Shown here: piece after piece, positions 789 to 62,423 of the stretch
Numbering within the stretch: the first letter of the stretch is position 1
Layout of the letters: each line of letters opens with the position of its first letter
NCBI RefSeq assembly: GCF_001194135.2
Contig: NC_068990.1
Location: 88,650,286-88,714,285 of the forward strand
Length of the DNA: 64,000 bases
Reading direction: 5' to 3'
Source: Octopus bimaculoides
Taxonomy: Eukaryota
The notes under the pieces: generated by a model
Told to the model about the DNA's origin: nothing
Seen by the model: the letters and a program-made list of their open reading frames with translations, nothing else
Database searches by the model: none
Made by a program: the position numbers and the translations under genes

Positions 789-1028
789 TTACTAAGGTCA
801 ATTTTGTAAAAGTAAAAGGTGCAATTCTGGATGTACCTGGGAAAACTTTGTGGAATAAGGAAAATGTAACAGCAGAAGACTGTGCAGAAAAATGTTTGTT
901 TGACAAAACTTGTTTATCATTTGAAATAATGAAGAAAAGTGGAAAATGTTATTTATCAAAGGAGACTGCAGCTTCCATCAAGAAATTGAAAACAGCCAAA
1001 GACAGAGATTACTACCAACAAATAAAAC
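789..1028 (+). CDS. Exon A1, PAN/Apple type A (240 nt)
   Basis: ttctag|TT ACT AAG ... ATA AAA C|gtaatt; [28 protein letters not shown]...DYYQ. Confidence 0.9.
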
Positions 1029-4000
1029 GTAATTATTTTTTGTGTTTCTCTCTTCTTTTGAAATTTGTGATTCCATTTGTGCTTCACAGTTTATAGAAAA
1101 CCATTTCTGTAAAGATATTGACAGATTTATGTATAAGGACAGACATAAACACATTCCAGAAATAAGTAATTTTAGGAACCATACATACTGTTAGGGTATT
1201 TTCACACTGCACTTGTTTATCTTGAACACTTTTCTGTAATATGTTTATGTTTGTTTCTTTTTTTGTGTGCAACAAAGGAAACACTTGTCATTTTCTTAAA
1301 CATGAATAGTATTGTAGTAGTAGTGGTTTCAAATTTTGGCACAAGTTTTGAAGGAACAGTGTTAGTTCTAACCACCAGCCCCAGTTCTTGACTGGTATTA
1401 TATTGTATCTTCACTGGATGGATGAAAGGCAGTTTTCCTTAGCAGAGTTTTGAACTTGAAATGTAAAGAATTGGAAGATGTATAGCAAGGTAGCATGACA
1501 TTTTCACAGTATCTCACCATTTGTTGCTCTCCTCCATAAATTGATATTTAGAATAAGAAAAAATGTAATGCTAATCAATTTAGTTGTGTATTTCTGATAT
1601 ATTTACATGGTTATGGCTGGAAGCCCATCTTATCACCAATGCTTTTACCAAACCCCTGCTTTATTACTTTAATATCTGAGGAATTGTGAGTGAAGAACAA
1701 GTCGATGAGCAACTGGTCTTGTCTAGTTATTTCTTAATTTGCTTTGCAAGTGAATATGAGCTCTGAGGCAAGAGTAACTGGTTTGTCTTTGGAAAGCTTT
1801 ACCACATGTGTACATATTGCCATGCTACTAAAATCAGAGAAACCGTATACTGGAACTAAAGAGTTCTCACAACATTGATCTCAGAATTTTAGATATTTTA
1901 GACCTCTTCTGATGGTGTGCTTTTTTTTAGGATTAAATTACCAAAAGGATACTTCACATGCTGGTTCACCATTTTTTGAACTATGTTAAAATTCTACAAA
2001 AGCACACCATTATAGGAAGGTACCAATGGATTACATGCAACTTAAATTTTGAAAGAAGGTTTCAAATGAGCCTGAAGATGTTCTACATTCACATGAATTC
2101 TGACTTAATTGTCATTTTGTGCATCAATTATTTGTTTATAATGCAGGCATGTGCAACCCATGGATAATGAACGTTCAATGATGATGATGGTGATGATGAT
2201 GATGACCATTTAAAACAAATTGTGCACTAAATTCTATATAATATTTAATATGTGTGTGTGAATATAAAATGTCTTTCTTGTTTTCTTTCATTTCTTTTTT
2301 ATCTAGCCGATGATGATGTTTTTACATTTAAAAAAACTGCCATACCAGAGCATGATACATTTGATCAGATTAAAGGAATCACTTTAAAGGAGTGTGAAGA
2401 TGCTTGCCTTCAAATTCCAGGATGTAAATCTTATGAGTACCATGAAAAAAAAGAATTCTGTAATCCATCTAATGAGACTCACTTGACTTATGACCTTAAA
2501 CCCAACAAAGATGGATGGGATATACATATCATGAACCCAGGTCAGTGGAGTGTATTCATTAAATTTTATGTGTGTCTGCATGCATATGTCGCTTTTGTGT
2601 GTATCTAGACATGCACATATATTATATATATGTGCACATGCACACACACATATTGTCTCAATATCCTTTTGCAGCTTTTCTTTTTTGCAGCGAACACATT
2701 CTGCAAACTTTTTACCTTCCATTTTTTCCACTTTATGGAAGTCAATATTTTTTCTCTTGACATCCGCCTCAGATGATTTTGCTTTTCTCCCAGTTCTGTT
2801 CTTTCTGGAAGAAAATCCCTCACGTAACTGAGATGTGATGTGAACCTGAAATTTCAAATGGTCATAGTCCTTTGGTGGCGGAGGTGCTTAGTGGCTTTTT
2901 ACATAAACAATATTTGAATCAACTATATTTAGACATAATGCTGGAGATATATGGATCACCATACCTTATATCATGTGGAGGCGCTTGGCTTAGTGGTTAG
3001 GGTGTCAGCACCATGATCGTAAGATTATGGTTTCGATTCCTGGACCGGGCGACGTGTTGTGTTCTTAAGCAAAACACTTCATTTCATGTTGCTCCAGTCC
3101 ACTCAGCTGGCAAAAATGAGTAACGCTGCGATGGACTGGCATCCCATCCAGCTGGGGAACACATATGCCATTGAAACTGGGAAACCGGGCCCATGAGCCT
3201 GGCTAGGCTTTAAAAGGGCGCATTTATTTTTTTATACCTTATGTCAGGACTCCAGTGGTTCCACAGTTGAGGAATCTGCTTGATATCAAACATAGTGTTT
3301 ATAGAAAAAAAGCTCGCATTTCTGCAATATTATTTGGCTTCCATAGTGGATTAGGTCTTCCACGAATAGAAATTATGCATTGAGCATATTTATTTGTTTC
3401 CTCCGTGAGAGTTTCAAAAGTACTTTGCAGTAAAAATGAAAATAAATAGTCCAATAGTTGAACATTGGGAGTTTGACCATGTTGTGGACTAGTTTTGTCT
3501 ACGAAATCAAGAATTATGGTTGATGTAGTAATCTTCAACCATATTGCCATAATGTTTTCAATATCATTTTCATCGCTTCCATTTTTATCACTTTCATTAT
3601 CAAAATTTTCTTCGTTTGATGAAGATTTGTAAATATCAATATCAGATTCGTCTGAAGACAAATCCCTGTTTTTTACATTTATGTTTTGTTTAAAGTTGGA
3701 ATCGCTACTTGCTGATGCCATATCATTAAAAATTAAGGTATGCACTTCTCTTTACCACTGTAGTTTTGATATCACTCCTGGTGGTATTTGCTTTACAATG
3801 AGTTAGGCCTAATGGTAACAACAGTTGCCTCACACTGTGTCCAAGAAATCCCCTACATCTAACTTTGATTGGAAAATGCTCTGCTTTCCAGCTTGCATCT
3901 TCATATTCTTCAAGGAGGTTTTCATAAAGATCAATCTTTCAAACCCAAGCAGCATCAATGTTATTTTTATGAAGAACCATTAACTGAGCTAGATTTACAA

Positions 4001-7000
4001 CTTCCCCCCCCCCCCATCATTTTCAAGTTCATGGTGAAGAAAAAATTTTTTTTAATTCCTATCAAAACAGAGAAAATACATGTGGGTGACCTATTCTGAA
4101 ATAGCACGTTTTTATATGTGTAAGCAAATTTCTTCAATTTGATTCATGCAATATGTTTCGTTGTAACATTGTCATTATTTCCTCATTCTCACCCTCTTCC
4201 TAAAATGCACACACCATTGATATCAATTTCTGTTTTCAATTCCAGCTAATGACAAAATAAACTGTGGACCACCAAGAGACATTGCTGGTACATCAAAGTC
4301 CTACAGTTCCACCAACTACAAAGATGAAGTGACTTACACATGTCCACATGGAGAAAAACTAAAATCAAAATGTGAAAAGGACAACAAATGGACTTCATTA
4401 GATTCTACCTGTGAAGGTAATGCAAATAGCTTCTCTCTTTTCATCTCTATGTAATTTTGTTTTATTTTTATGCTAAATGTCTTTGTCAGAGTAGGACTGG
4501 CTGACTATATGGCAATTTCCACAGTGATTATAGATAGAGGGAGGGAGAAAGGAAGCTATCCTCGGTTCAAAGACCTCCCCAAATACTTGCAATAGAGGGG
4601 AAATCATTTATTCTACCCAAGGGCCAGGTATTAAATTGGATGATGGATTAAGTCTACCAACCAAATAGGAGATATGTGGCAGTTTTTCCCTCCAACAGGC
4701 TTCCACACAGCTTTCATCTACCAAATTTCATCCTTAGTTGTGGAGCAAATTTTTAACCACATAAGCAAGACTCCACCCAGACCACAGAGTTGTGAACTAA
4801 CCTTCTTAACCTCACACTTACACCCAAAGGATTCTATGTGTGTCTTCTCTTAATTTCTAACTTTTTCACCCGTACCATACACCATCAGCCAAAACTCTGT
4901 ACAGTATAGTGCTGTGGGTCCTTCACTAGGATTCAGCAATCCTCTATATATATATATATATATACACACATATATCTTTATGTATGTATGTTGATAGATA
5001 TGTAGTTAAGTAGCTATGTATCTAGATAGGTAAGTAGGTTAGTATGGTGGCTGGTTGGTTCATTGTAATATGTCGGTGGAGAGCACCATATATGAGGCAC
5101 TTCCAGAACTTAGTTTTACTGAGGTGAGCAGGTTGTCCACTTCGTATACTCGGACAGCTCCATCCTTTGTCACCTCCTTTGTGTGGTCCAGCATCTAGAG
5201 ATCAGCTCACTATTTGACCTGATATCTTACTGGGTCTTTTTCTTTCATAAGTTCCTTCCACTTCAAGCAATTGGCATCTTCTTTATATAGCTGCCTTCAT
5301 CTAGACATATTACGTGGCCAAGTCACCAGTCTTCTCTCTTGTACATTGCATTACTCCTATTATGCCTAATTTCTCTGTCAACACATTTGCACTTCTTAGA
5401 GCATGCACACTGATATTGCACATTCTTTGGAGCATGCTAGCTTCATTCATCTCTAGTCTTTGTAAATCCTCTCCATTCACAGTCCACATCTCATAGCTAT
5501 ATAATATAGCTGTTTGTACACAAAGACATAAAAATCTGCCTCTCACTCAGAGATTGATTTTTTGTTGCTAACAAGGGTAATAGCTCTCTGAACTTTCTCT
5601 ATCTCATTTGTAATCAAGGTAATTATACATTCAAAATATCTTCCTCCACTGCTAATTAGGTCACCCATGTAACAGACTTCATGGGGGCTTCCTGGAAAAT
5701 CCAATTCCCATGTGTCTTTAACGTTTATTATTCTTGTACATCTGCTACATACAAAGACTACTTTCTCTGTTAACCTTACAGTAATTCCACTGCACCTGTC
5801 ATATGTCCATATGTTACACAGAGTACATCATATGGAATTCCTACCAACACCTTTCCTACTTACTTAACAGGGCACACACATAATATACATTCACTATTGA
5901 TATCAGTTTCTGTTTTCAATTTCAGCTTTTGAAGACATTGACTGTGGAAATCCAAAAGACATTGCTGGTGCAGAAAAGTCCTATGAAACCACCGCCTATA
6001 AATCTGAAGTGACCTATACTTGCCCAGAGGGAGAGCAACTAAAGTCAATATGTGAAAAGGACAACAAATGGAATCCAATTGTGGAAACCTGTAACGGTAA
6101 CATAAGTAGCTTCTTTCTTGTTCTCTCTGTCTATGTAATTTTGTTTTAGTTTTGAGTTAAATGTGTTTGTCATAGGAAGACTGACTGAATACATGACTAG
6201 TTCCTCAATGTCTGTGGGGGAGAACTAGTTATTCTCAGACCAGGGATCTCACAGACGCTTGCAACAAAGTGGACATCTTTAATTCTACCTAAGGGCTGGG
6301 TAATAGTATTAAGCTGGATGATAGATTAATTCTACCAACCAAGAGCTGGAAGTGTGGACAGTTTTTCCTCACCACTTCCACATATTGGCATCCACATAGG
6401 GGTTCCACACTAAATGTTGAACTTAATATTACAAGCTAACACATCTGACACAGCTTATCCTCTGCTGTAAACTGTTGTTTGGTTCAATACCACCACAAGA
6501 CACTTCAGGTGGTCATGGTGATGGTGATGAACAATACTTAGTCACTGTTTATATATTTATTACAATATCAAGCATTCACATTGACTTGCAATTGCTCATG
6601 TTGAACATAGACCACAAGAATCACACAAACGTAGAAAGGAGAGTGGCCACAGAATTTCATTACATAACTGTTTCTGTCATGACTAGCTTATTAAAAGATA
6701 TAAGTACCATCTTGTTGCACTAAATTATGTATTCCTTGTTTAGACACATGGTCATATATACAGGGGAAGGGACAAAATAATGGAAACACCTAGCATCATA
6801 GCATCATAATTTTGAAATATCTATAAAACCATCAAAAGCTTGTTTATTTTTGTTTTTTGATTTATTATTAGTGTTGCTTAATATGTTTAGCTAAAATTGC
6901 TGTTTCTTTTCAGATATCATCAGAAAAAGGTAATTAAAATTCATTAAAAGGACAGATCTTTTGAACTTTCAAAGAGGTCAAATTGTTGGTGCTCATATGA

Positions 7001-12051: not shown

Positions 12052-12088
<37 letters not shown>

Positions 12089-23097: not shown

Positions 23098-23138
<41 letters not shown>

Positions 23139-28200: not shown

Positions 28201-28683
28201 AAAATGTGTCAACAGAATTCTGTGCAGAAAAATGTTTGTCTGACAAAACTTGTTTATCTTTTGAAATAACTAAAGCAAGTGGAAAATGTTATTTATCAAA
28301 GGAAACTGCAGCTACTTCCAAGAAAATAAAATCAGCCAAAGACAGAGATTACTACCAACAAGTAGATTGTAATTATTCTTTGTATTTCTCTTTTTCTGAA
28401 ATTTATGATTGCATTTATACTTCATAGTTTATAGAAAACCATTTCTGTAAAGACATTGACAGGTTTAACCACTCGGACAGACAAGCACATTCCAGAAATA
28501 AGTAATTTTAGTAAATATAAATACTGTTAGGGCCTTTTCACACTGCATTTGTTTACCTTGAACACTTTTCTGTATTATGTTTTCAATTGCTTCTTTGTGT
28601 GTGTGTGTGTGTGTGTTCTTGTGCATGTGTGTGTGTAAGAAAGGAAATACTTGTCACTTTACTTAAACATGAATATTATGATG

Positions 28684-42896: not shown

Positions 42897-42956
<60 letters not shown>

Positions 42957-45900: not shown

Positions 45901-46272
45901 GAGTATAAAATATACTTCTTGTTTTTTCTTCTTTTCTAGCTGATGACCAGCCTCTTGTATTGAGAAACGTTAGCTTCCCAGAGCAGGTCACTTTAAAACA
46001 GCTTAAGGATAAAATCTTAAAGGAGTGTAAGGAATCCTGCCATCAATATCCAGGATGTAATTCTTTTCAGTACAATAAGAAAGACAAGTTATGTGATCTG
46101 AGTAATGTGACTCACATGACTGGTGTACTTAAACCCAACACAGGAAATTGGGATGTATACATTATTAATCCAGGTCAGTAGAGTCCTTCCCCAGAAACAG
46201 TTCTCAAGTTAAGAAATTATACAATCTCACCTTAGTATTCTGTATTATTCATACTCTATCTAAATTTCTTTC

Positions 46273-46345
<73 letters not shown>

Positions 46346-46720: not shown

Positions 46721-46779
<59 letters not shown>

Positions 46780-47857: not shown

Positions 47858-47892
<35 letters not shown>

Positions 47893-50800: not shown

Positions 50801-51150
50801 TTCTTTTTTATCTAGCCGATGATGATGTTTTTACACTTAAAAGAACTACCATACCATTTCACGATACATTTGGTCAACTTGAAGGAATCAGTTTAAAGGA
50901 ATGTGATCATGCTTGCCTTCAAATTCCAGGATGTAAATCTTATGAGTATCATGAAAAAAAAGAATTCTGTAAACCATCTAACGAGACTCACCTGACTTAT
51001 GACCTTAAACCCAACAAAGATGGATGGGACATACATATCATGAACCCAGGTCAGTGGAGTGTATTCATTAAATTTTATGTGTGTCTGCATGCATCTACAT
51101 CAGGTTGTGTGCATCTACATATGCACATATGTATTATATGTATGTTTATA

Positions 51151-51218
<68 letters not shown>

Positions 51219-54200: not shown

Positions 54201-54561
54201 CACACAGAGTTGAAATTCTGTTTGATTTTTTTCACCCCTTCCTTCCTTATTCATCTATCACCTCTTCTTTTCTCACTCATATGTTGTGATGAAGAAAGAC
54301 TCAAGAGTATTATTATAGTAGGTTCTCTTTTCCATTATTTCTGAAATTTGTGATTCCATTTGTACTTCATAATATATAGATAACTATTTCTGTAAAAACA
54401 TTTGTCTACCTCTAAGGGCAAGCATAGACACATTTTACACAAGCAATTTTAGGAACTGTAGATACTGTTAGAGCATTCTCACAAAGCATTTGTTCACCTG
54501 GAACATTTATGTATATTTTCAGTGATTGTTTTATGTAAGAAAAGAATTTCTTTTTTTTTCT

Positions 54562-54595
<34 letters not shown>

Positions 54596-55434: not shown

Positions 55435-55484
<50 letters not shown>

Positions 55485-58400
55485 CGTGTATCCTAAATTT
55501 GATTTGATTCAGTGTTATACATGTATATTAAATAGCTTATGTAGTTTTTTTAACGAATATACATTGTCATTATGTTTGAGAAATTTACTATGATTAAGAG
55601 AACTGCAAAAGCCAATGTTTGTGTGTGTGTGTGTCCCCATCTGTTTTGAGTGTGGGCATAAAATTTACTCTTTGTTTTCTTTTTTCTTTCTAGCCAAAGA
55701 TAAGAAAATTAAGCTTCATAAAGTTAGCATATCTGAGCAAGATATTTTAGGACAGCTTCAGAATGTGAACTTAAAGAAGTGTAATGAAGCTTGCCATCAA
55801 CATCCAGAATGTAATTCATATCAGTACAATGAGAAAGAAATGATCTGTGATTTGAGTAATGGGACTCATTTGACTGATAAACTTAAACTCAATGATGGAA
55901 ATGGGGATACTTACATCTTTGATAAAGGTCAGTAGAGTATTTTCATTTTATTTTTATGTGCATGCTTATGTGTGTCTTACATATTAAAATTGAAAATGTC
56001 TCTGTGTGTGTATCAGTATGTCCTCGTTTTGCACCAAAATGGTTTGACCAGTTTTTCTTAAACTTCACATGCACATTGCTTATGCGTCTGGGGAGGTTTT
56101 AAGTATAAGTTGATTTCGAAAAATGTTCGGGTAAACGGCAGGAGGTATAACATTTGGGCGTGAGTGAACACTGGGAGTAATTATTTTTTAGCTTCCAAGG
56201 GAAATAACCCATCCCCTCCTGGAAATAACCACCAAGGGAAATAACCCATTCATTTTCAGTATTCTTATTTCTTAGTATTTGAACTATTTTAGTTATTTTT
56301 CTTAATTTATCCAATACAACGCTTAAACAAGTAAATAGTATTCTCCTAAACAATAGATCCACTTATTTCAGTTAGTGACTTATTCACGAATATACCAACA
56401 CTAGCGCTGCTGAGGGTAATATTCTCTGGGAACGCACAAAAGCTTTTTTTCACAATTAATTACTTTGAATTGTTATTATCTCATGTCTAATTAGCCTGTT
56501 ATTACATAACATGTTTCACAATTTTAGTATACATACCTTATTAGTATTGCCTCCTAAAATCTATATACTCTCAGAATGTATCAAAGCCCTTTTCGGAGCT
56601 ACTTTATCTGAATTTTTATTATAGGGTAATTAATTTCATGTTATTACATAACTGACTTCACAATTTGGGTATTCATAACTTATTGAGAATTCCTAAAAAC
56701 AAATACTTTGTAAGACAGTTTGGTATTCTCAATAAATACACAAAAACCGTTTTAAGGGCTACATACTTTGTATTGTTGTTACTGGATTAGCGAAACAAGT
56801 ATGAGAATGGAACCAAGGGATAAGCTTGCTTTCCCAGGAATTACCAGGTATGTCAACTACTGTATATATATATATATATATATGCTTATTATAGCCTCAG
56901 GTTGACCAAAACTTTCTGAGTGGATTTCGTACTTGGAAACTGAAAGAATAAATGTCGTATATATGTGTGTGCGTGTCTTGTGTTTGTACCCCCACCATTG
57001 CTTGACAACTGATGCTGCTGCGTTTATATTCCCATAACTTAGCGGTTTGGTAAAAGACCCTGACAGAGTGAGTACTAGGCTTACAAAGAATAAATCCCGT
57101 GGTTGATTTTTCCGACTAATGGCGATGCTCCAGCATGGCCGCAGTCACATGACTGAAACAAGTAAAACAATAAAAATCTAGGAACTGCTATCATAAATAT
57201 TGGTAACATCAACAATAATTATAAATATTTTTAACCCATGCCAGCATGGACAGTGGACATTAAATGATGATGATGCTGAGTAGTGATGGATTGAGAGAAT
57301 CATCAGAACATCAGACAAAATGTGTTGTGGTATATATTGTGGCTCTTTGACTTCTGAGTTCAGATCTGGCTGATGTCAAATTTGCTTTGTCAGGGCCAAT
57401 AAAATAAAATCCCAGTCAAATATAGGGACCAATTTAACCAGTTAACTCTTACCTTAAACTTTTGTCCTTCTTTCTACATTATAAATTAAATTATTGTTGT
57501 TGTTTCTCTTCATATTAATTTTTTAATTTTTTTATTCCAGTTGCTAAGAAATATTTTGTGAAAGTAAAAAATGGAACACTGGATGTACCTGAGAAATTGT
57601 TGTGGCATAGGAAAAATATAACAGCAGAAGACTGTGCCAAAAAATGCTTTTCTGAAAAAAATTGTTTATCGTTTGAAATAAATAAAGAAAATAGAAAATG
57701 TTACTTATCAAAGGAAACTGCAGCTGCCTCCAAGAAAATAAAATCAGCCAAAGACAGAGATTACTACCAACGAGTAAAACGTAATTACTCTTTATGTTCC
57801 TCTTTTTCTGAAATTTGTGATTCCATTTGTACTTCATAGTATATAGACAACCATTTGTGTAAAGACATTGACAGGTTTATCTATAAGGACAGATATGGAC
57901 GTAGTCCTCGGAAAGAAAAGCAATATTAGGAAATGTGGTTCTGTTAAGACATTCTCAAACAGAATTTGTTCACTTTAAACACTTTTATGCATGATTGAAG
58001 TTGCTTTTCATGTGCTGGTGGCTGTAAGAAAGGAAGCTCTTATGTTTCTTAAATCTGAGTAGTAGTGGTGGTAGAAATCACTTCAAATTTTGGTACAAGG
58101 CCAGCAGTTTTGAGGGGACAGTATTAGTTCATACTGCTGACCCCCAGTTCTTGATAGATTTCATAATTCATCAAAATCAGAAGGATGAAAAATAGTTTTT
58201 CTTGGCAGAGTTTGAACTTGAAATGTAATGAGATGGAAGACATACTGCTAGGTAGCATGGCTTTTGCACAGTATCTTGCTATTTGTTCCTCTCCTCCGTA
58301 ATCTGATACACAAAATAACAGAAGAAAATGATTATTTCCCTAGCTTACTCATATGTTATGTACAAGCTTTACAAAAGAATTATTATTTCAAATACTTCTA

Positions 58401-61400
58401 TTATGTTATATATTTAAAACTTTAGATAATATAAGTACCTTATAATTGAAATTTTTATTTTAAATATTTGAAACTCATCTGGTTCATTATTTTCTAAATG
58501 GACAATTTATTATAAAAATAGAATCCATCGATCAAACTATTTTTTGACATGAGATATCCTTCTCAAAATTAATGTGAATTCTAGTACATCATGAGACACA
58601 CATGGAACCTTGCCTCACTGTTTTAGGCTGTAGATAATACATTTGTACACCCCTCTTCTGATGGTGTGCTTTTGTTTAAGATTAAATTACCATAAGGACA
58701 CTTCACATGCTGGTTGTCCATCTTTTGAACTATGTTTAGATTCAACAAAAGCACACCATTAGAAAAGGAAAGCACAAATGGATTACAGGCAACTTAAATT
58801 TTGAAACAATGTTTGAAATGAGCCTGAAGATGTTTTACATTCACATGAATTCTGACTAAGTTGTCATTTTGTAGATCAATTATTTGTTTATAATGCAGGC
58901 ATGTGCAACCCATACTTGCATGGATAATGAATGTTCAATGATGATGGTGATGATGATGATAATCATCATCATTTAAAACAAATAATGCACTAAATGCTAT
59001 ATAATATTTAATATGCATGTGTGACTATAAAATGTCTTTTTTGTTTTCTTTCATTTCTTTTTTATCTAGCCGATGATGATGTCTTTACATTAAAAAGAAC
59101 TGCCATACCAGGGCATGATTCACCTGATCGGATTAAAGAAATCAGTTTAAAGGAGTGTGATCGTGCTTGTCTTCAAATTCCAGGATGTAAATCTTATGAG
59201 TACCATGAAAAATATAGTTACTGTGATCCAAGTAATAAGACTCACCTGACTCATGACCTTAAACCCAACGAAGATGGATGGGATATACACCTCATGAACC
59301 CAGGTCAGTGGAGTGTATTCAATGACAGCAATTTTTTCTTTTTCTCTCTTTGTTCCTTCTCTTTCTGACTTTTCCCCTTTGTTTTTATATATTGTAATGA
59401 TGACAGCATTACACTATATACGTATATACATACATGTATATTTGTGTGCATGTATTTATATCTGAATGTAATTTTTTTCTATTTGATTCACTCAATACTT
59501 TTTCTTGTAATATTACCATTTCCTCATTCTCGTTCTCCTCCTAAGATTCACATACCATTCATATCAGTTTCTTTTACCATTTCCAGTTTACTCAAATATT
59601 AACTGTGGACCTCCAAAAGATATTGCTCGTGGATCGACTTTCTTCAATTCCACCATTTATAGATCTGAGGTGACCTATAGATGCCAAAATGGAGAAAAAC
59701 TAAAGTCAGTGTGTACAAAGGACAATAAGTGGACTTCAATAACATCTATTTGTAAAGGTAACATAAATAGCTTCTCTTTGTTGTCTCTGTCTAAGTAATT
59801 TTGTTTACTTTTGTAATAAATATCTTTGTCAGAGGAAGACTGGTTGACTCCATATTAATTTTCTAAGTGTCTGTGGTTGGTATGTGGAAGACATTTCCAC
59901 AAATTATGCAACAGAGTGAACTCCATTAATTCTACCCAAGGGGTAGATAATGATATTAAATTGGTAGATGGGTTAAGTCTGCCAAACAAAAGCTGAAAGT
60001 GTAGAAACTTGTCACAAACAAGCTTGCACAACCAGATTTCAGATTTCCAGCAACCAGATTTCATGCACAAAGCTGAGTTGTGAAGCAAATCCTTAACCAC
60101 AGACAAAACTACATTGTTGTTAGGTAAACTTCTTACCTCTGTAGCTATTCCTTGGCAAATCTTGATAGTTTTTCTCTTAATTTCTAACTTTTGCAGCCAT
60201 CCCAAACTTTTTACAATATACTTCCATGAGTCCTTATTTTGTAAAACTCAGCAGCCCTTTAAAACAGACTTCTTGTTATTTTCCACTTCATACCCTTTAA
60301 TTACATTATTAATAATAATGTTTCCTGATTTATACACAAAGGTAAGTTTTGATGAGAGTTGTTTAGTCAATACCATCAGCCTTATAATTTGATATATACA
60401 TTATGTCATTGACCTCCAACAAGTATGAAAGGCAAAGTGAACTCTGGCTTCATTTGAACTGATATCCAAAAGACCCGAAATACACAATTTAAAGCTTTTC
60501 TTCCAATTCTCTCATTACTATACATTGATAATGATGTTGAAGATGTTGAGGCAAAATTCTTGAATGTAGATGGATGTCGGTCTAGGGCTAATTGAAGAAC
60601 CCCCATCATGTCTTTCTCATGGGCAGTAACTGACTATGTAAAGTGGACTAATTTAGACTGAGAATCAAACGCAGATCATTGGCGCACACCACTCAGCACA
60701 TATTTATACTAAAAGAACAACTAGGGGATAAATACCCATGGTCACTTCCTGCATAGAAAACAAATAGTAAAGTAGCTAATTTTTGAAGCAGCAAGGCACC
60801 AGACATCTCTATTTATATTTATTCACTAGATGAGATGAGAGAAAAATTATTTTTGTTGTCTCAGGTCAAACATTGCAAAAGAATAAAGTCATTGGCTATA
60901 ATCTTTCTCATGACTGGCCATATTTAGTTACATTCTTTTACATTCTGGGTTCAAATCCCACCTGATGAACACTAATCAAGTAGTGAGATCAATCTAGTCA
61001 TATGTATTCTCACCACAGACAGAGTGGCCTTGCGTTTAAGTTCATAACCATTCATTAATATCAGTGACATCAATAATAATTATAATAATTCTTGTCATTA
61101 AAGATGATAGATTGATGGAATCATTAGAGCATCAGAGAAAATGTGCTGTGGTATTTGTTCTGGCTCTTTAATGCCTGATTTCAAATTCTGCTGATGTTAA
61201 ATACAATGCCAATCAAGTGTAGGTGGACAATTTAATCAACCCTCTCCTACCACAAAGATTTAGGCTTCTTGCTATAATAGCAAATAATATTATTATTCTT
61301 GTATTTCATTGATTGAAATTTTATTTTAAATCTAGATGTTAAGAGCGAATTTGTGAAAGTAAATGATGCATTTCTTGATGTACCTGAGAAAAAACTGTGG

Positions 61401-62423
61401 AAGAAGAAAAATGTAACAACAGATGAATGTGCTGAAAAATGTTTGTCCAATGAAAATTGTTTATCATTTGAAATAACCAAAGGAAGTGGAAAATGCTTCT
61501 TATCAGAGAAAACTGCAGATCACACCAAGAAAATAAAAGCTGACAAAAGCAAAGATTACTACCAACGGATAAAATGTAATTATTGTTTGCATTTTATCAC
61601 TGGAATTCTCTTTTCTATTATTTCTGAAATTTGTGATTCCATTTGTACTTCATAATATATAAACAACCATTTCTGTTAAGACATTGACAAATTTACCTAT
61701 AAAGACAGGCATAGACACATTCCTTGTATAAGCAATTTTAGGAACTGTAAATATTTTTAGGACATTCTCAAAAAGTTCCAAGACTACTGGTGTTTAATAA
61801 AAAATAACTTATTTTCCTAAGTTTTAATATCATCTGCTTTGAAATGGTCACCTTACGCAGCAGTACACCAGTTCCAGTTTTCCTGCCACCTTTGGAATCC
61901 AGCCTGGAAGTCATTTTCCACAAGCAAGATGAGCACCTTCCATGATTTGCTGTTGATCAGTGTTAAAACGGTGACCTTTATCTTATATACCTGTAACCTT
62001 AGGTATCTACTAACTTTCAATAGTCTTTCAAGTGTTGGGAGTTTTTGATATCACCTCATATAACAGTTATACCATTTCAAAATTACGTGATGCATGCATT
62101 ATAATGTGTAGAGTGTGTGTGTATGTGTGCATCTGTTTTGAGTGTGGGTATAAAATGTACTTATTGTTTTCTCTTCTTTTTCCTTCCAGCTGATGATACA
62201 AAAATTAAGCTTCATAAAGTTAGCATACCTGAGCAGGATGTTTTAAGACAACTTAAGAATGTGAACTTAGAGAAGTGTAATGAAGCTTGCCTTCAACATT
62301 CAGAATGTAATTCATATGAGTACAATAAGAAAGAAAAGGTCTGTGATTTGAGTAATGTGACTCATTTGACTGATAAACTTAAACCCAGTGATGGAAATAG
62401 GGATGTTTACATCATTGATCCAG
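789..62423 (+). CDS. Partial multi-exon gene: giant (PAN/Apple-PAN/Apple-Sushi/CCP)n extracellular protein; 36 exons seen, both ends outside the window
   Basis: 36 AG...GT-bounded exons with lengths divisible by 3, all phase 1-1 and stop-free. PAN cores are C-x3-C-x5-C-x11-C with S-[FY] after the third Cys. CCP cores are C-x25-C-x9-C-x5-W-x5/6-C. Exon lengths sum to about 7,728 nt if C3 is 171 nt. Confidence 0.88.
2307..2540 (+). CDS. Exon B1, PAN/Apple type B-alpha (234 nt)
   Basis: atctag|CC GAT ... AAC CCA G|gtcagt; [31 protein letters not shown]. Confidence 0.9.
2977..3233 (+). mobile_element. tRNA-derived SINE with target-site duplication
   Basis: A-box TGGCTTAGTGG, B-box GTTTCGATTCC, T-rich end; flanking ATACCTTATATCA (2961-2973) and ATACCTTATGTCA (3234-3246). 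Confidence 0.85.
3299..3745 (-). mobile_element. piggyBac-like transposase N-terminal fragment
   Basis: Acidic/Ser-rich N-terminus then [20 protein letters not shown]...W.P....EMRAF, the usual start of piggyBac/PGBD-type transposases; truncated. Confidence 0.72.
4246..4416 (+). CDS. Exon C1, Sushi/CCP (171 nt; not in the ORF track)
   Basis: ttccag|CT AAT ... TGT GAA G|gtaatg; [52 protein letters not shown]. Confidence 0.88.
5290..5546 (-). mobile_element. RTE-like LINE 3' RT fragment
   Basis: [43 protein letters not shown] resembles the RTE C-terminal LYG.ETW...RLE..E..MLRW motif; partial copy also near 32140-32220. Confidence 0.65.
5926..6096 (+). CDS. Exon C2, Sushi/CCP (171 nt)
   Basis: tttcag|CT TTT ... 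TGT AAC G|gtaaca; [52 protein letters not shown]. Confidence 0.88.
6761..8127 (+). mobile_element. Full-length but defective Tc1-like DNA transposon with DD36E spacing (Incomer-like)
   Basis: TA|CAGGGG..GGACAAAATAATGGAA left TIR and TTCCATTATTTTGTCCAACCCCTG|TA right TIR. Transposase pieces [15 protein letters not shown] and QDDNAP...SPDLNIIE, with 36 residues between D and E. Stops, frameshifts and a ~100-nt insertion. Confidence 0.92.
9096..9335 (+). CDS. Exon A2, PAN type A (240 nt)
   Basis: ttgtag|AT GCT CAG ... GTA AAT T|gtaatt; [28 protein letters not shown]. Confidence 0.9.
11414..11647 (+). CDS. Exon B2, PAN type B-beta (234 nt)
   Basis: tttcag|TT GAT GGA ... AAC CCA G|gtcagt; [31 protein letters not shown]. 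Confidence 0.9.
11744..12055 (+). mobile_element. (ATG)n-tailed retroposon 3' end (RTE-related LINE 3'UTR or partner SINE)
   Basis: TAGAAACCATGCCAAATCAGA...CCAACCCATG...GTTAAAT(GAT)n; related copies at 24221-24600 (-), about 33480-33680 (-), 46925-47125 (+) and about 57230-57280 (+). Confidence 0.7.
13225..13334 (+). CDS. Exon C3, Sushi/CCP; 3' part lost in assembly gap (expected end about 13395)
   Basis: ttccag|TT GTT ACA; [32 protein letters not shown] then Ns; 109/110 nt identical to the start of C8. Confidence 0.8.
13335..13717. other. Assembly gap; further gaps at 23139-23806, 33167-33480, 42850-42896 and 46346-46720
   Basis: Runs of N, mostly abutting microsatellites. Confidence 0.99.
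14560..15220 (-). mobile_element. Highly decayed CR1/L2-type LINE RT relic downstream of CCP exons
   Basis: Minus-strand translation has remnants such as [10 protein letters not shown]...GGVLQ and LYQ...CGTYP; homologous copies at about 26440-27230, 34130-34350 and 52800-53100. Confidence 0.45.
15622..15861 (+). CDS. Exon A3, PAN type A (240 nt)
   Basis: ttccag|TT TCT AAG ... GTA GAA C|gtaact; [28 protein letters not shown]. Confidence 0.9.
17638..17871 (+). CDS. Exon B3, PAN type B-alpha (234 nt)
   Basis: atctag|CT GAT ... AAT CCA G|gtcagt; [31 protein letters not shown]. Confidence 0.9.
17955..19240 (+). mobile_element. Degenerate Penelope-like element (RT C-terminal half plus GIY-YIG endonuclease)
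   Basis: GLYRDDAL..., [10 protein letters not shown]...RPYLKPN..YIN...[14 protein letters not shown]...[12 protein letters not shown], then [16 protein letters not shown]...[11 protein letters not shown]. Confidence 0.8.
19643..19813 (+). CDS. Exon C4, Sushi/CCP (171 nt)
   Basis: tttcag|CT TAT ... TGT AAA G|gtaaca; [52 protein letters not shown]. Confidence 0.88.
20941..21180 (+). CDS. Exon A4, PAN type A (240 nt), acidic variant
   Basis: ctttag|AT CCT CAG ... GTA ACA C|gtaatt; [28 protein letters not shown]. Confidence 0.9.
21975..22160 (+). mobile_element. tRNA-related SINE (same family as the relics in front of A exons)
   Basis: GAGC.TGCAGAATCATTAGC...GTTCTGAGTTCAAATTCC...AATAAAATAAGTACCAGTT; better-preserved copy at 53235-53445. 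Confidence 0.75.
22757..22990 (+). CDS. Exon B4, PAN type B-beta (234 nt)
   Basis: ttccag|CT GAT ... AAC CCA G|gtcagt; [31 protein letters not shown]. Confidence 0.9.
23948..24020 (-). pseudogene. tRNA-Thr(TGT)-like sequence, degenerate
   Basis: Minus strand GGGCAGTTTAGTTTAATGGTAAAACACTTGACGTGTAATCACAGAGATGTGAGTTCGAGTCTCATGGCTGGCC. D stem GTTT/AAAC and T arm GTGAG-TTCGAGT-CTCAT are intact; the anticodon stem is imperfect; TTTT follows about 10 nt downstream. Confidence 0.6.
25568..25735 (+). CDS. Exon C5, Sushi/CCP (168 nt)
   Basis: ttacag|TT GTC ... TGT AAA G|gtaata; [51 protein letters not shown]. Confidence 0.88.
28129..28368 (+). CDS. Exon A5, PAN type A (240 nt)
   Basis: ttctag|TT ACT AAG ... 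GTA GAT T|gtaatt; [28 protein letters not shown]. Confidence 0.9.
29343..29576 (+). CDS. Exon B5, PAN type B-alpha (234 nt)
   Basis: atctag|CC GAT ... AAC CCA G|gtcagt; [31 protein letters not shown]. Confidence 0.9.
30732..30902 (+). CDS. Exon C6, Sushi/CCP (171 nt) with an extra Cys
   Basis: ttctag|CT AAT ... TGT AAA A|gtaatg; [52 protein letters not shown]. Confidence 0.85.
32583..32753 (+). CDS. Exon C7, Sushi/CCP (171 nt)
   Basis: tttcag|CT TAT ... TGT AAT G|gtaaca; [52 protein letters not shown]. Confidence 0.88.
35764..36003 (+). CDS. Exon A6, PAN type A (240 nt)
   Basis: ctctag|AT GCT CAG ... GTA AAC T|gtaatt; [28 protein letters not shown]. Confidence 0.9.
36060..36510 (-). mobile_element. 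R4/Dong-like LINE RT fragment
   Basis: [17 protein letters not shown] (cf. AWIDYKKAYD..PHSW) and [11 protein letters not shown]. Confidence 0.62.
36721..36954 (+). CDS. Exon B6, PAN type B-beta (234 nt)
   Basis: tttcag|TC GAT GAA ... AAC CCA G|gtcagt; [31 protein letters not shown]. Confidence 0.9.
37235..37455 (+). mobile_element. RTE (BovB-like) LINE RT 3' fragment
   Basis: [39 protein letters not shown]...KRRLRWL. Confidence 0.75.
38253..38423 (+). CDS. Exon C8, Sushi/CCP (171 nt)
   Basis: ttccag|TT GTT ... TGT AAA G|gtaatg; [52 protein letters not shown]. Confidence 0.88.
39081..39320 (+). CDS. Exon A7, PAN type A (240 nt)
   Basis: ttccag|TT TCT AAG ... GTA AAT C|gtaatt; [28 protein letters not shown]. 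Confidence 0.9.
39580..39810 (-). mobile_element. RTE-like LINE 3' end fragment
   Basis: Minus strand [24 protein letters not shown] followed by 3'UTR-like sequence related to 24420-24600. Confidence 0.6.
39900..40745 (-). mobile_element. R4/Dong-like LINE RT fragment
   Basis: [63 protein letters not shown]. Confidence 0.78.
41323..41556 (+). CDS. Exon B7, PAN type B-alpha (234 nt)
   Basis: ttccag|CT GAA GAT ... AAC CCA G|gtcagt; [31 protein letters not shown]. Confidence 0.9.
42391..42838. mobile_element. Non-autonomous foldback/MITE-like element with ~118-bp TIRs, set in (TA)n
   Basis: 42391-42507 is the reverse complement of 42719-42838, with a few mismatches and one 3-nt indel; GC/CpG-rich relative to flanks; no coding potential. 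Confidence 0.8.
43489..43659 (+). CDS. Exon C9, Sushi/CCP (171 nt)
   Basis: ttccag|AT CAC ... TGT AAA G|gtaaca; [52 protein letters not shown]. Confidence 0.88.
44805..45041 (+). CDS. Exon A8, PAN type A (237 nt, one-codon deletion)
   Basis: ctctag|AT TCT GAA ... ATA CAA T|gtaatt; [27 protein letters not shown]. Confidence 0.9.
45540..45780 (+). mobile_element. R4/Dong-like LINE RT C-terminal fragment
   Basis: [55 protein letters not shown]. Confidence 0.72.
45940..46173 (+). CDS. Exon B8, PAN type B-beta (234 nt)
   Basis: ttctag|CT GAT ... AAT CCA G|gtcagt; [31 protein letters not shown]. Confidence 0.9.
46775..46920 (-). mobile_element. tRNA-derived SINE 5' part, antisense
   Basis: Plus strand ...CCAGAACCATGTGGTTGGGAAGCAAACTTCTTACCACACAGC, the reverse complement of a tRNA-like head. 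Confidence 0.6.
48377..48544 (+). CDS. Exon C10, Sushi/CCP (168 nt)
   Basis: ttccag|TT CAT ... TGT AAA G|gtaatg; [51 protein letters not shown]. Confidence 0.88.
49130..49366 (+). CDS. Exon A9, PAN type A (237 nt, one-codon deletion)
   Basis: ttccag|TT ACT CAG ... GTA AAA C|gtaatt; [27 protein letters not shown]. Confidence 0.9.
49560..50230 (+). mobile_element. L1/Tx1-like LINE RT fragment
   Basis: [21 protein letters not shown]...[14 protein letters not shown]...VRVNGH (cf. LDQ.KAFDRV.H..L..VL...GF...F..WI..LY...V.VNG). Confidence 0.6.
50816..51049 (+). CDS. Exon B9, PAN type B-alpha (234 nt)
   Basis: atctag|CC GAT ... AAC CCA G|gtcagt; [31 protein letters not shown]. Confidence 0.9.
51152..51216. 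repeat. (CA)n microsatellite, representative of many (TA)n, (TG)n, (ATG)n, (TTA)n, (TAG)n and (TGGA)n tracts
   Basis: Read directly; other examples 12055-12085, 13718-13780, 20430-20455, 28680-28728, 36615-36655, 54565-54595, 55440-55480. Confidence 0.97.
51807..51977 (+). CDS. Exon C11, Sushi/CCP (171 nt)
   Basis: ttccag|CT GTC ... TGT AAA G|gtaaca; [52 protein letters not shown]. Confidence 0.88.
53235..53445 (+). mobile_element. tRNA-related SINE ending about 45 nt before the A10 acceptor
   Basis: GAGCTGGCAGAATCATTAGC...GTTCTGAGTTCAAATTC...TTTGCCTTTCATCCTTTCGGG...AAGTACCAGTT...GGCCTTGTGCCAAAATTTGAAACC. Confidence 0.8.
53491..53730 (+). CDS. Exon A10, PAN type A (240 nt)
   Basis: atctag|AT TTT AAG ... 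ATA AAA T|gtaatt; [28 protein letters not shown]. Confidence 0.9.
55694..55927 (+). CDS. Exon B10, PAN type B-beta (234 nt)
   Basis: ttctag|CC AAA GAT ... GAT AAA G|gtcagt; [31 protein letters not shown]. Confidence 0.88.
56025..56430 (+). mobile_element. Possible Helitron/Helentron-associated non-autonomous element (DINE-1/HINE-like)
   Basis: GTATGTCCTCG...GACCAGTTTTTCTTAAACTTCACATGCACATTGCTTATG after a (TG)n run; resemblance from memory only. Confidence 0.35.
56890..57175 (+). mobile_element. 3' half of an abundant SINE
   Basis: GGAAACTGAAAGAA...CGTATATATG..., TAACTTAGCGGTT.GG.AAAAGA, GCTCCAGCATGGCCGCAGTCA.ATGACTGAAACAAGTAAAA. Confidence 0.65.
57541..57780 (+). CDS. Exon A11, PAN type A (240 nt)
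   Basis: ttccag|TT GCT AAG ... GTA AAA C|gtaatt; [28 protein letters not shown]. Confidence 0.9.
59070..59303 (+). CDS. Exon B11, PAN type B-alpha (234 nt)
   Basis: atctag|CC GAT ... AAC CCA G|gtcagt; [31 protein letters not shown]. Confidence 0.9.
59587..59757 (+). CDS. Exon C12, Sushi/CCP (171 nt)
   Basis: ttccag|TT TAC ... TGT AAA G|gtaaca; [52 protein letters not shown]. Confidence 0.88.
61336..61575 (+). CDS. Exon A12, PAN type A (240 nt)
   Basis: atctag|AT GTT AAG ... ATA AAA T|gtaatt; [28 protein letters not shown]. Confidence 0.9.
62190..62423 (+). CDS. Exon B12, PAN type B-beta (234 nt)
   Basis: ttccag|CT GAT ... GAT CCA G|gtcagc; [31 protein letters not shown]. Confidence 0.88.

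What the first reader, a model, noticed from the sequence alone, without database searches (positions are those of the whole stretch)
789..62423. Giant modular (PAN-PAN-Sushi)n gene made of 36 interleaved domain-sized exons
Seen: 12 PAN-A, 12 PAN-B and 12 CCP exons in ABC order with intact splice sites. No stop or frameshift occurs in about 7.7 kb of coding sequence, while the introns are full of indels and TEs. The CCP exons are absent from the ORF track. Established: PAN/Apple (plasminogen/HGF N-domain, factor XI, apicomplexan micronemal adhesins) and CCP modules mediate protein and carbohydrate recognition. Inference: a secreted or cell-surface protein of at least about 2,576 aa with a repeated PAN-PAN-CCP triad. 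I do not recognise this architecture as a characterised cephalopod family; candidate roles are immune recognition, adhesion, gamete/egg-coat or venom-gland secretion.
Basis: partly seen in the sequence, partly recalled or inferred. Interest (0 to 1): 0.9.

Follow-up and report, generated by a model that had tools for sequence, protein, structure and literature searches.

The report
Octopus giant PAN-PAN-Sushi exon array
The window holds 36 intact, selected exons (24 PAN/apple, 12 Sushi) from the inside of a very long, poorly annotated octopus exon array, which in Octopus bimaculoides covers at least 568 kb, ends in a GON domain, and probably encodes one or a few giant secreted binding proteins.

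Summary
On the + strand, 789-62423 holds 12 PAN-A, 12 PAN-B and 12 Sushi/CCP exons. All are phase 1-1, with AG/GT sites and no stop in 7,667 coding bases.

Two corrections:
- The order is not strictly ABC. Two units are ABCC, one is AB, and the last is AB at the window end.
- One CCP exon (13225-) is cut by the first assembly gap.

Selection is clear. All Cys are invariant. No nonsense change is seen where at least 37 are expected. One in-frame indel is seen where about 32 are expected at the intron rate.

Close relatives exist only in octopuses. In O. bimaculoides chromosome CM046610.1 the same exon periodicity runs from about 88.25 to 88.82 Mb. It passes straight through the borders of several RefSeq "uncharacterized LOC" models and ends in GON-domain exons. 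The repeat unit equals exons 2-4 of the single-unit GON-Abd-1 gene, known from a posterior salivary (venom) gland transcriptome.

So the architecture is already in databases as fragmentary, partly misnamed ("SVEP1-like") models, but nobody has characterised it.

Best reading: an internal piece of a giant secreted, Lys-rich, N-glycosylated (PAN-PAN-CCP)n-GON binding protein.

The parts
789..1028 (+). Unit 1 PAN-A exon (A1 type), phase 1-1, 240 nt
2307..2540 (+). Unit 1 PAN-B exon (B1 type), 234 nt
4246..4416 (+). Unit 1 CCP/Sushi exon, 171 nt
5926..6096 (+). Unit 1 second CCP exon (ABCC unit), 171 nt
9096..9335 (+). Unit 2 PAN-A exon (A2 type)
11414..11647 (+). Unit 2 PAN-B exon (B2 type)
13225..13334 (+). 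Unit 2 CCP exon, first 110 nt only. The remaining 61 nt and the donor lie in assembly gap 13335-13717.
15622..15861 (+). Unit 3 PAN-A exon
17638..17871 (+). Unit 3 PAN-B exon
19643..19813 (+). Unit 3 CCP exon
20941..21180 (+). Unit 4 PAN-A exon
22757..22990 (+). Unit 4 PAN-B exon
25568..25735 (+). Unit 4 CCP exon (168 nt, one codon shorter)
28129..28368 (+). Unit 5 PAN-A exon (closest paralogue of 789)
29343..29576 (+). Unit 5 PAN-B exon
30732..30902 (+). Unit 5 CCP exon
32583..32753 (+). Unit 5 second CCP exon (ABCC unit)
35764..36003 (+). Unit 6 PAN-A exon
36721..36954 (+). Unit 6 PAN-B exon
38253..38423 (+). Unit 6 CCP exon
39081..39320 (+). Unit 7 PAN-A exon
41323..41556 (+). Unit 7 PAN-B exon
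43489..43659 (+). Unit 7 CCP exon
44805..45041 (+). Unit 8 PAN-A exon (237 nt)
45940..46173 (+). Unit 8 PAN-B exon
48377..48544 (+). Unit 8 CCP exon (168 nt)
49130..49366 (+). Unit 9 PAN-A exon (237 nt)
50816..51049 (+). Unit 9 PAN-B exon
51807..51977 (+). Unit 9 CCP exon
53491..53730 (+). Unit 10 PAN-A exon
55694..55927 (+). Unit 10 PAN-B exon. No CCP exon follows it before the next PAN-A.
57541..57780 (+). Unit 11 PAN-A exon
59070..59303 (+). Unit 11 PAN-B exon. Protein model P0005 starts 13 residues into it.
59587..59757 (+). Unit 11 CCP exon, joined to its neighbours in P0005 exactly as modelled here
61336..61575 (+). Unit 12 PAN-A exon, included in P0005
62190..62423 (+). Unit 12 PAN-B exon. 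P0005 ends at its last codon. No further exon is found up to 64000.

Best explanation
The window is an internal segment of an octopus-specific tandem array of exon triplets: PAN-A, PAN-B and CCP/Sushi, one domain per phase 1-1 exon. The array arose by repeated duplication of exons 2-4 of a GON-type gene, whose structure is signal-peptide exon | PAN | PAN | CCP | GON exons.

Shown:
- All 36 exons are intact and under selection for an open frame, for the four Cys of every module and for the splice sites.
- The domains are PAN/apple and Sushi.
- Close relatives occur only in Octopus species, among what these databases hold.
- In O. bimaculoides the same periodic exon array runs for at least 568 kb on one strand. 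It passes through the borders of the RefSeq models and ends with PAN-PAN-GON and a stop codon.

Inferred:
- The window belongs to that array. The species follows from a 279-aa protein model identical to the window's splice.
- The exons are spliced in series into very long mRNA(s).
- The product is a secreted, basic (14.8% Lys, pI about 8.8), heavily N-glycosylated beads-on-a-string protein. Its many PAN pairs would act as multivalent binding sites for glycans, polyanions or proteins, as in the HGF N domain, the factor XI apple domains and the apicomplexan MIC4/SML-2 lectins. The CCP modules would act as spacers or binders, and the C-terminal GON domain as the constant end.
- A role in a secretion (saliva/venom, mucus or extracellular matrix) is the most likely, by analogy with the single-unit paralogue named GON-Abd-1.
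For: - Exon anatomy and open frame.
- Pfam PAN_1 x24 and Sushi.
- Predicted fold (pLDDT 81.7) matches prekallikrein/FXI apple domains, TgMIC4, the SML-2 lectin and the HGF N domain.
- Selection: invariant Cys and 0 of about 37.5 expected nonsense changes. Exons 86.9% identical with 1 in-frame indel against flanks at 69.6% with 70 indels.
- Relatives are only octopus proteins of 709-4,470 aa. In a search of 1.84 billion representatives the score falls from 402 to 195 bits, to Sushi-only hits.
- P0005 is 100% identical to the splice B59070-C59587-A61336-B62190. Its UniParc number lies in the O. bimaculoides 2015 batch.
- The GON-type gene has the structure SP | A | B | C | GON exons.
- The array is continuous across RefSeq gene borders: 79 of 84 exon hits are intact, and of the 30 that lie outside annotated genes 28 are intact (L005 and L001 overlap, so some hits are counted twice). 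The terminal A-B-GON exons are present.
- None of 14 models in three species starts with a signal peptide. Almost all start mid-domain.
- No signal-peptide exon or GON exon lies in the window.
Against: - There is no transcript evidence.
- The window overlaps none of the five O. bimaculoides loci fetched (for L001-L004; L005 was not compared with the window), so its place in the array is inferred.
- No current RefSeq protein identical to the window's splice was returned.
- dN/dS among paralogous exons is high (median 0.56-0.71, above 1 for some recent PAN-B pairs), so constraint on surface residues is weak or diversifying.
- The assembly is a short-read one with gaps in a highly repetitive region, so the unit count may be wrong.
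- No signal peptide was found anywhere in the sampled array, so secretion is inferred from domain types only.
Confidence: 0.7

Rival explanations
1. A tandem cluster of separate, shorter genes (some hundreds to about 4,000 aa each, as RefSeq and ENA annotate it). Each would have its own promoter. Some PAN-A exons would serve as first coding exons, with a built-in signal peptide made from the in-frame ATG and hydrophobic stretch just upstream.
For: - RefSeq and ENA split the region into models of 709-4,470 aa.
- Of 33 PAN-A exons, 9 are preceded in frame by ATG plus 12-40 mostly hydrophobic residues. Four are in the window, starting at about 9056, 20886, 35725 and 44744, and some have A-x-A-like ends.
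- The O. sinensis model P0003 reads such a stretch as coding.
- A degenerate PAN-B exon sits where model P0002 ends (L002 32173).
Against: - All 12 acceptor AGs with their pyrimidine tracts are kept at the same place.
- 24 of 33 PAN-A exons have no such ATG, and T-rich acceptor tracts translate to hydrophobic residues anyway.
- The paralogue's signal peptide lies in a separate exon 4.3 kb upstream.
- The models start mid-domain and end by intron read-through.
- Intact exons fill the 'intergenic' stretches.
- No stop-bearing terminal exon lies in 64 kb.
- P0005 joins CCP 59587 to PAN-A 61336 through the acceptor.
Confidence: 0.17
2. A cassette array. One transcription unit would run from a 5' signal-peptide exon to the 3' GON exons, and only subsets of the PAN-PAN-CCP units would be included in each mRNA. 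This would give many isoforms of a secreted recognition protein, working like Dscam or clustered-exon systems.
For: - Every exon is phase 1-1, and the PAN-B exon joins the first GON exon in frame in model P0165 and CCP joins it in P0009. Any subset would therefore stay in frame.
- High dN/dS with an invariant scaffold fits diversification of binding surfaces.
- The O. sinensis model LOC118764742 has 2,643 aa over 152.7 kb, about 17 aa/kb against 40 aa/kb in the window. It therefore either skips many exons or has longer introns.
Against: - Phase 1-1 is the general rule for extracellular modules and proves nothing about splicing choice.
- The only conserved intronic element found looks like an old SINE, not a docking or selector pair.
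- No isoform data exist.
- The models that exist join neighbouring exons in series.
Confidence: 0.1
3. Not a working gene: decaying exon relics, or an assembly artefact that multiplied a few real units.
For: - Five gaps, a short-read assembly and a repetitive locus.
- A 163-bp tract next to gap 1 is 98.8% identical to unit 6, while the other side of the gap is 79% identical.
- dN/dS near or above 1 in some recent pairs.
- No current RefSeq protein identical to the window was returned.
Against: - Copies differ by 7-40% at the DNA level, so they are not assembly duplicates.
- 0 of about 37.5 expected stops, 144 of 144 readable Cys positions kept and all splice sites kept.
- The indel rate in exons is about 30-fold lower than in the flanks.
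- Similarly long PAN-PAN-CCP models exist in two other octopus species, assembled independently.
Confidence: 0.03

Closest known systems
GON-Abd-1 / GON-Abd-2 (Abdopus aculeatus; UniProt R4G2C1, R4G7D0) and their orthologues: O. bimaculoides LOC106874924, O. sinensis LOC115215708, O. vulgaris CAI9728787
   Same: - The N-terminal PAN-PAN-CCP block is homologous (50% identity, E 3.9e-66).
- The exon plan is the same, one domain per exon.
- The gene lies on the same chromosome and strand, about 115 kb upstream of the first array exon seen in O. bimaculoides.
- The array itself ends in a homologous GON domain.
   Different: - It has a single unit, 465 aa, with its own signal-peptide exon.
- The window has 12 units and neither a signal-peptide exon nor a GON exon.
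- That the GON-Abd proteins came from a posterior salivary gland transcriptome (Ruder et al. 2013, J Mol Evol) is my own knowledge. That paper is not in the searched library.
Automatic octopus gene models with the same repeat: O. vulgaris CAI9728790.1 (4,470 aa), O. sinensis LOC118764742 (2,643 aa) and LOC115215518 (2,529 aa), O. bimaculoides LOC128248837-40 and LOC106869402
   Same: - They carry the same PAN-PAN-CCP(-CCP) units, 40-88% identical per exon.
- The CC-A2-B2-C block of the window matches O. sinensis P0012 residues 2309-2637 in order.
   Different: - None is identical to the window's product.
- All are truncated: no signal peptide, mid-domain starts and read-through ends.
- Some are named 'SVEP1-like', yet neither the 4,470-aa model scanned here nor the precomputed Pfam lists of the others show VWA, EGF or pentraxin domains.
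- Both halves of the window's internal duplication map to one O. sinensis block, so unit numbers differ between species.
Vertebrate apple/PAN proteins (factor XI, plasma prekallikrein, HGF N domain, plasminogen PAp) and apicomplexan PAN adhesins or lectins (TgMIC4, Sarcocystis SML-2, AMA1)
   Same: The domain fold is the same. Foldseek gives E 8e-7 to 2e-3. The HGF N domain aligns over about 85 residues at RMSD 2.8 A with 25% identity. These domains bind proteins, heparin or galactose.
   Different: - The partner domains differ: serine protease, kringles or none.
- Those proteins have 1-6 PAN domains, not dozens.
- There is no sequence-level relationship beyond the Pfam family.
- The binding specificity of the octopus domains is unknown.
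Giant modular extracellular proteins built from hundreds of small disulfide modules (Drosophila Dumpy) and long CCP arrays (CR1, SVEP1)
   Same: The design principle is the same: very many tandem small modules, one per symmetrical exon, expanded by intragenic duplication. CR1-like proteins are the next best hits, through the Sushi module only.
   Different: - The module types and the C-terminal domain differ (ZP in Dumpy, GON here).
- The comparison with Dumpy rests on my own knowledge and was not tested.
- Whether the octopus array makes one giant protein is unknown.

Membership tests
PAN/apple domain (Pfam PF00024 PAN_1) | Profile match above the curated cut-off | tested here: met
   Single exons score 44.4 and 32.9-35.6 bits against a cut-off of 21.4. 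The full splice gives 24 separate stretches.
PAN/apple domain (Pfam PF00024 PAN_1) | Conserved Cys framework; helix packed on a beta-sheet | tested here: met
   Four Cys are invariant in 12 of 12 PAN-A and 12 of 12 PAN-B exons. The AlphaFold model (pLDDT 81.7) matches apple, HGF-N and MIC4 structures. This is a predicted structure, not a solved one.
Sushi/CCP/SCR (Pfam PF00084) | Profile match above the cut-off; four Cys and the conserved Trp; one phase 1-1 exon of about 60 codons | tested here: met
   A single exon scores 25.9 bits against 20.7, and the splice scores 94 bits. The Cys columns are 12/12, 12/12, 11/11 and 11/11, and the KW motif is conserved. The exons are 171/168 nt and phase 1-1.
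Coleoid GON-domain protein family (GON-Abd-1 type) | Homologous PAN-PAN-CCP block with the same exon plan | tested here: met
   50% identity, E 3.9e-66. LOC106874924 has the exon order SP | PAN-A | PAN-B | CCP | GON.
Coleoid GON-domain protein family (GON-Abd-1 type) | C-terminal GON domain (PF08685) | tested here: inconclusive
   No GON exon lies in the window. The O. bimaculoides array ends in one: LOC106869402, 114.8 bits. The physical link between the window and that end is not shown.
Coleoid GON-domain protein family (GON-Abd-1 type) | N-terminal signal peptide | tested here: inconclusive
   No homologue of the signal-peptide exon was found in the window or in L001, L002, L004 or L005. 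ATG-hydrophobic stretches upstream of 9 of 33 PAN-A exons are probably acceptor tracts. The 5' end of the array was not reached.
Coleoid GON-domain protein family (GON-Abd-1 type) | Expression in the posterior salivary (venom) gland | not testable with these tools
SVEP1 (the name given to O. vulgaris and O. sinensis relatives) | VWA, EGF, pentraxin and HYR domains besides the CCPs | tested here: not met
   Only PAN and Sushi families are credible in the window's splice and in the 4,470-aa O. vulgaris model.
Clustered alternative-exon systems (Dscam type) | Selective inclusion of array exons shown by transcripts; docking or selector RNA elements | not testable with these tools
   Exon symmetry is met, but no reads were available. 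The one conserved intronic element looks SINE-derived.

The most novel reading that the evidence does not exclude
The whole array of at least 568 kb (CM046610.1, about 88.25-88.82 Mb in O. bimaculoides, of which this window is a piece) is one transcription unit: signal-peptide exon, then on the order of 100 PAN-PAN-CCP units (roughly 300 symmetrical exons), then GON. It would yield either a protein of about 20,000 aa (titin/Dumpy size class, by far the largest molluscan protein) or a combinatorial set of isoforms. The unit estimate assumes that the unsampled parts of the array resemble the sampled ones.
Probability: 0.3. Interest if true: 0.85.

Novelty: new variant of a known kind. Interest (0 to 1): 0.6.

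Why it matters
If the reading holds, octopuses carry a lineage-specific, rapidly evolving mega-array of binding modules. It grew out of a small gene known from a venom-gland transcriptome, and current annotations cut it into meaningless pieces.

It matters for four reasons:
- It is a clean natural example of gene growth by exon-triplet duplication. Nested duplications and differing unit numbers between species are still visible.
- It is a candidate for one of the largest animal genes or proteins.
- It is a candidate major component of an octopus secretion (saliva/venom, mucus or matrix). Proteomics would miss it if databases hold only fragments.
- It warns that the RefSeq and ENA models and the name 'SVEP1-like' for this family should not be used as they stand.

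Tried and rejected
I used P0005 instead.
3. Looking up P0005's contig: not on record.
4. Placing the window on the O. bimaculoides chromosome. There is no match of 93% or more to L001-L004; L005 was not compared with the window. No RefSeq protein identical to the splice came back in three searches. Those searches are visibly incomplete: the third missed even P0005.
5. A signal-peptide or GON exon in the window: none.
6. A hidden or degenerate CCP exon in unit 10, or after the last PAN-B: none.
7. The idea that the conserved 300 bp upstream of PAN-A exons is a regulatory or selector element. It carries a tRNA T-loop-like box and a tail typical of a SINE, and it was duplicated with the unit. ARAGORN finds no tRNA.
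8. The idea that the ATG-hydrophobic stretches are relics of the paralogue's signal peptide. Rejected, because that peptide lies in a separate exon.
9. Sequence search of the PDB: only a weak DAF CCP hit.
10. Literature. No paper combines PAN domain, Sushi and octopus. 'GON' occurs only in reference lists. None of the LOC identifiers appears anywhere.
11. Weak Pfam MBD hits inside CCP modules are taken as spurious.
Full report
OBSERVATION

The window is AT-rich (34.8% G+C) and has five N gaps. tblastn with one PAN-A, one PAN-B and one CCP peptide taken from the window finds 12 strong hits of each kind. All are on the + strand. Around each hit there is an AG acceptor behind a pyrimidine tract and a GT donor, placed so that every exon starts and ends in phase 1.
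- PAN-A donors read |GTAATT (or |GTAACT).
- PAN-B donors read CAG|GTCAGT.
- CCP donors read AAG|GTAA.
- Exon lengths are 240/237, 234 and 171/168 nt.

Spliced in order, the exons give 7,667 real coding bases and about 2,555 residues without a stop.

- The order is A-B-C-C in units 1 and 5, and A-B in unit 10. No CCP remnant lies between 55928 and 57540. Unit 12 is A-B at the window end.
- CCP exon 13225 is cut after 110 nt by the first gap.

Two subtypes alternate, A1B1 and A2B2. The closest paralogues mostly lie about 26.6 kb apart, so a block of about 13 exons appears to have been duplicated within the window.

GAPS

This was tested first, as the scan's program asked. Gap 13335-13717 removes the last 61 nt and the donor of a CCP exon.
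- The sequence left of the gap (13172-13334) matches unit 6 (38200-38362) at 98.8%.
- The sequence right of it (13770-14024) matches 38541-38794 at 79%.
- The flanks are therefore collinear with a complete paralogue, and the missing piece fits the gap.
- The sharp contrast in identity means that the 163-bp tract is either a gene-conversion tract or a contig-end artefact.

The other four gaps lie in introns. In three of them I read simple repeats at the edges off the ORF translations, without measuring them. None of these gaps breaks the A-B-[gap]-C order. In paralogous introns no extra exon lies at the matching place where this could be aligned.

Continuity across the gaps therefore rests on collinearity only.

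IS IT MORE THAN CHANCE, AND IS IT ALIVE?

Pfam gives PAN_1 for all 24 PAN exons as separate stretches. It gives Sushi above the cut-off for a single exon and 94 bits overall.

All four Cys of each module are invariant in every readable copy. Among paralogous exons there are at least 610 substitutions. With 6.2% of possible changes being nonsense, about 37.5 stops are expected and none is seen, P about 1e-17.

In ten closest-paralogue pairs the figures are as follows.
- Exons: 86.9% identical, with one 3-nt gap in 2,166 bp.
- 250-bp flanks: 69.6% identical, with 70 gap openings in 4,724 bp.

dN/dS between paralogous exons is high. The median is 0.56-0.71, and some recent PAN-B pairs exceed 1. 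The scaffold is therefore conserved while surface residues change fast. Synonymous divergence of the closest pairs (0.07-0.2) is lower than flank divergence. This may reflect exon-limited gene conversion or forced flank alignments, and I did not resolve it.

The introns hold TE remnants: Tc1/mariner at 6961-8075 and reverse transcriptase at 40470-40754. Upstream of every PAN-A exon lies an old element that I read as SINE-like, which was copied along with the unit.

RELATIVES

Three word-index searches and one exhaustive phmmer search of 1.84 billion representatives find full-length relatives only in octopuses.

| Species | Models |
|---|---|
| O. bimaculoides | LOC128248837-40, LOC106869390, LOC106869402 |
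| O. sinensis | LOC118764741/2, LOC115215518 |
| O. vulgaris | CAI9728790 (4,470 aa), CAI9728792 and others |

After these the score drops from 402 to 195 bits, to proteins that match the Sushi module alone, such as amphioxus CR1.

More distant relatives are these.
- A cuttlefish PAN-CCP-CCP-GON protein.
- An Argonauta four-PAN protein.
- PAN domains joined to VWD or WSC domains.

The single-unit paralogue is GON-Abd-1 of Abdopus and its orthologues, at 50% identity. In O. bimaculoides this gene has a separate signal-peptide exon, then one exon each for PAN-A, PAN-B and CCP, then four GON exons. The repeat unit of the window equals its exons 2-4.

WHERE THE WINDOW BELONGS

P0005 is a 279-aa protein known only by a UniParc number. 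It is 100% identical to my splice of PAN-B 59070, CCP 59587, PAN-A 61336 and PAN-B 62190, and it ends at the last exon border. Its number lies in the same batch as O. bimaculoides 2015 proteins. The window is therefore most likely from O. bimaculoides. This is an inference.

P0005 is a gene model, not proven cDNA. It does show that an independent pipeline joined these exons at the same sites.

The window overlaps none of the fetched loci that I compared with it (for L001-L004; L005 was not compared). No current RefSeq protein identical to the splice was returned. It probably lies in an unannotated stretch.

THE LARGER PICTURE

On chromosome CM046610.1 I fetched four loci around RefSeq models and mapped the three exon types on them.
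- The A-B-C(-C) periodicity runs without interruption from 88,248,358 (the start of the fetched DNA) onward.
- It passes through the 'intergenic' stretches between LOC128248837, 38, 39, 40 and the next model of 4,083 aa.
- Near 88.79-88.816 Mb it runs into a final PAN-A, PAN-B, four GON exons and a stop codon (LOC106869402). An unrelated CACHD1-like gene follows.
- Of 84 exon hits, 79 have intact phase 1-1 models. Of the 30 that lie outside annotated genes, 28 are intact. L005 and L001 overlap, so some hits are counted twice.
- None of 14 models from three species begins with a signal peptide. Almost all begin inside a domain and end by reading into an intron.
- The O. sinensis model LOC115215518 ends in the unit orthologous to the last one before GON.

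The annotated gene borders are therefore artefacts. The array covers at least 568 kb, of which about 154 kb was inspected. At 4.5-7 kb per unit this would mean on the order of 100 units, if the unseen parts are alike.

WHAT IT IS AND HOW IT MOST LIKELY WORKS

Shown: a selected array of PAN, PAN and CCP domain exons, homologous to the N-terminal half of GON-type proteins.

Inferred: serial splicing into very long mRNA(s). The product would be extracellular, for four reasons.
- It consists of disulfide modules only.
- It has 35 N-x-S/T sequons, many at conserved places just before the first Cys of PAN-A and in the SNVT motif of PAN-B.
- It is 14.8% Lys with pI about 8.8.
- The predicted PAN folds resemble heparin-, glycan- and protein-binding PAN domains.

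A long string of such pairs would act as a multivalent binder or matrix and mucus component. Tissue and ligand are unknown. The only lead is the venom-gland origin of the paralogue's cDNA, which I know from memory and did not verify here.

RIVALS

Separate tandem genes with PAN-A exons as signal-peptide-bearing first exons:
- For: ATG-hydrophobic stretches precede 9 of 33 PAN-A exons.
- Against: conserved acceptors, no terminal exons, and P0005's use of the acceptor.

A cassette array with selective exon inclusion:
- For: it is compatible with universal phase 1-1 and with the sparse O. sinensis model.
- Against: no direct evidence.

Pseudogene or assembly artefact: excluded for practical purposes and by the similarly long PAN-PAN-CCP models in two other species.

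COMPARISON AND NOVELTY

The domains are ordinary members of the PAN and Sushi families. The gene belongs with the coleoid GON-domain family in its repeat unit, but the GON domain and the signal peptide were not found in the window, so membership of the full architecture is inconclusive for this piece.

The name 'SVEP1-like' carried by relatives fails. There are no VWA, EGF or pentraxin domains.

No paper in the library deals with this architecture or these loci. The thing is therefore already present in databases as fragments. As a multi-hundred-kb (PAN-PAN-CCP)n-GON array it is undescribed: a new variant of a known kind, the giant modular extracellular gene.

VERDICT

| Item | Score |
|---|---|
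| Observation | confirmed, with corrections |
| Interpretation | partly supported |
| Interest | 0.6 |
| Most novel reading not excluded | one transcription unit of about 300 exons |
| Probability of that reading | about 0.3 |
| Interest if that reading is true | 0.85 |

Noticed in passing
window 470-760, 8770-9060, 15450-15600, 38800-39050, 48820-49110, 57180-57510, 61050-61300 (about 300 bp upstream of PAN-A exons): A conserved element with a tRNA T-loop-like box (GAGTTCAAATCC) and a tail (...CCAGGGCCAATAAAATA.AATACCAGTCAAG...). I read it as an old tRNA-derived SINE that was inserted before the unit multiplied. Short parts of it are more alike between copies (up to 97.7%) than the exons are. 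ARAGORN calls no tRNA.
   Followed up: partly
window 13172-13334 versus 38200-38362: A 163-bp tract abutting gap 1 is 98.8% identical to unit 6 (dS 0 in the exon part). The sequence beyond the gap is 79% identical, and the upstream intron resembles unit 8 more than unit 6. This is either a gene-conversion tract or a contig-end assembly artefact.
   Followed up: partly
window 9056-9095, 20886-20940, 35725-35763, 44744-44804: An in-frame ATG followed by a hydrophobic stretch (for example [20 protein letters not shown]|DS) runs directly into four A2-type PAN-A exons and looks like a signal peptide. The same is seen at 5 of 21 PAN-A exons in related loci. It is probably the translated branch-site and pyrimidine tract, but alternative first exons are not excluded.
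   Followed up: partly
window 6961-8075 (+) and 40470-40754 (-): TE remnants in introns: a Tc1/mariner-type transposase (HTH_28/HTH_SB-like plus DDE_3) and a reverse-transcriptase fragment (RVT_1).
   Followed up: yes
window 18054-19233: Several overlapping ORFs in the intron after PAN-B 17638. One is a 206-aa Asn/Ser-rich low-complexity ORF, and there are mirror ORFs on the - strand. This is possibly another repeat element.
   Followed up: no
window gap edges 23085-23138, 42897-42960, 46290-46345/46721-46780, 13718-13800: Read off the ORF translations and not measured: three intronic gaps appear bordered by TA/CA-type microsatellites (translated as IYIY.../CVCV...), and gap 1 by a GGATGGATGG-like repeat (WMDGWMDG). 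This would explain why the short-read assembly broke there.
   Followed up: no
L001 4716-10202 and 38333-41566; L002 2379-10013 and 33545-36691; L005 192-10217; L004 242-8631: Intact PAN and CCP exons with good splice sites lie in stretches that the O. bimaculoides RefSeq annotation leaves between or before genes LOC128248837-40 and LOC106869402. The annotated models start mid-domain.
   Followed up: yes
Proteins P0004, P0007, P0163, P0166 (O. sinensis and O. vulgaris): These relatives are named 'sushi, von Willebrand factor type A, EGF and pentraxin domain-containing protein 1-like'. The one scanned here (P0007) holds only PAN and Sushi domains, and the precomputed Pfam lists of the others show the same. 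The weak MBD, SH3_3, Get5_N and Nup188_N hits in the 4,470-aa model look spurious.
   Followed up: partly
L002 32173-32328: A degenerate PAN-B exon (shortened, with no clean phase 1-1 model) sits exactly where RefSeq model LOC128248840 ends. It is one of the few damaged units in the sampled array.
   Followed up: no
window exons versus flanks (ten paralogue pairs): Synonymous divergence of the closest exon pairs (0.07-0.2) is clearly lower than the divergence of their 250-bp flanks (about 30% mismatches). This hints at exon-limited gene conversion or constraint on synonymous sites. It could also be an alignment effect.
   Followed up: no
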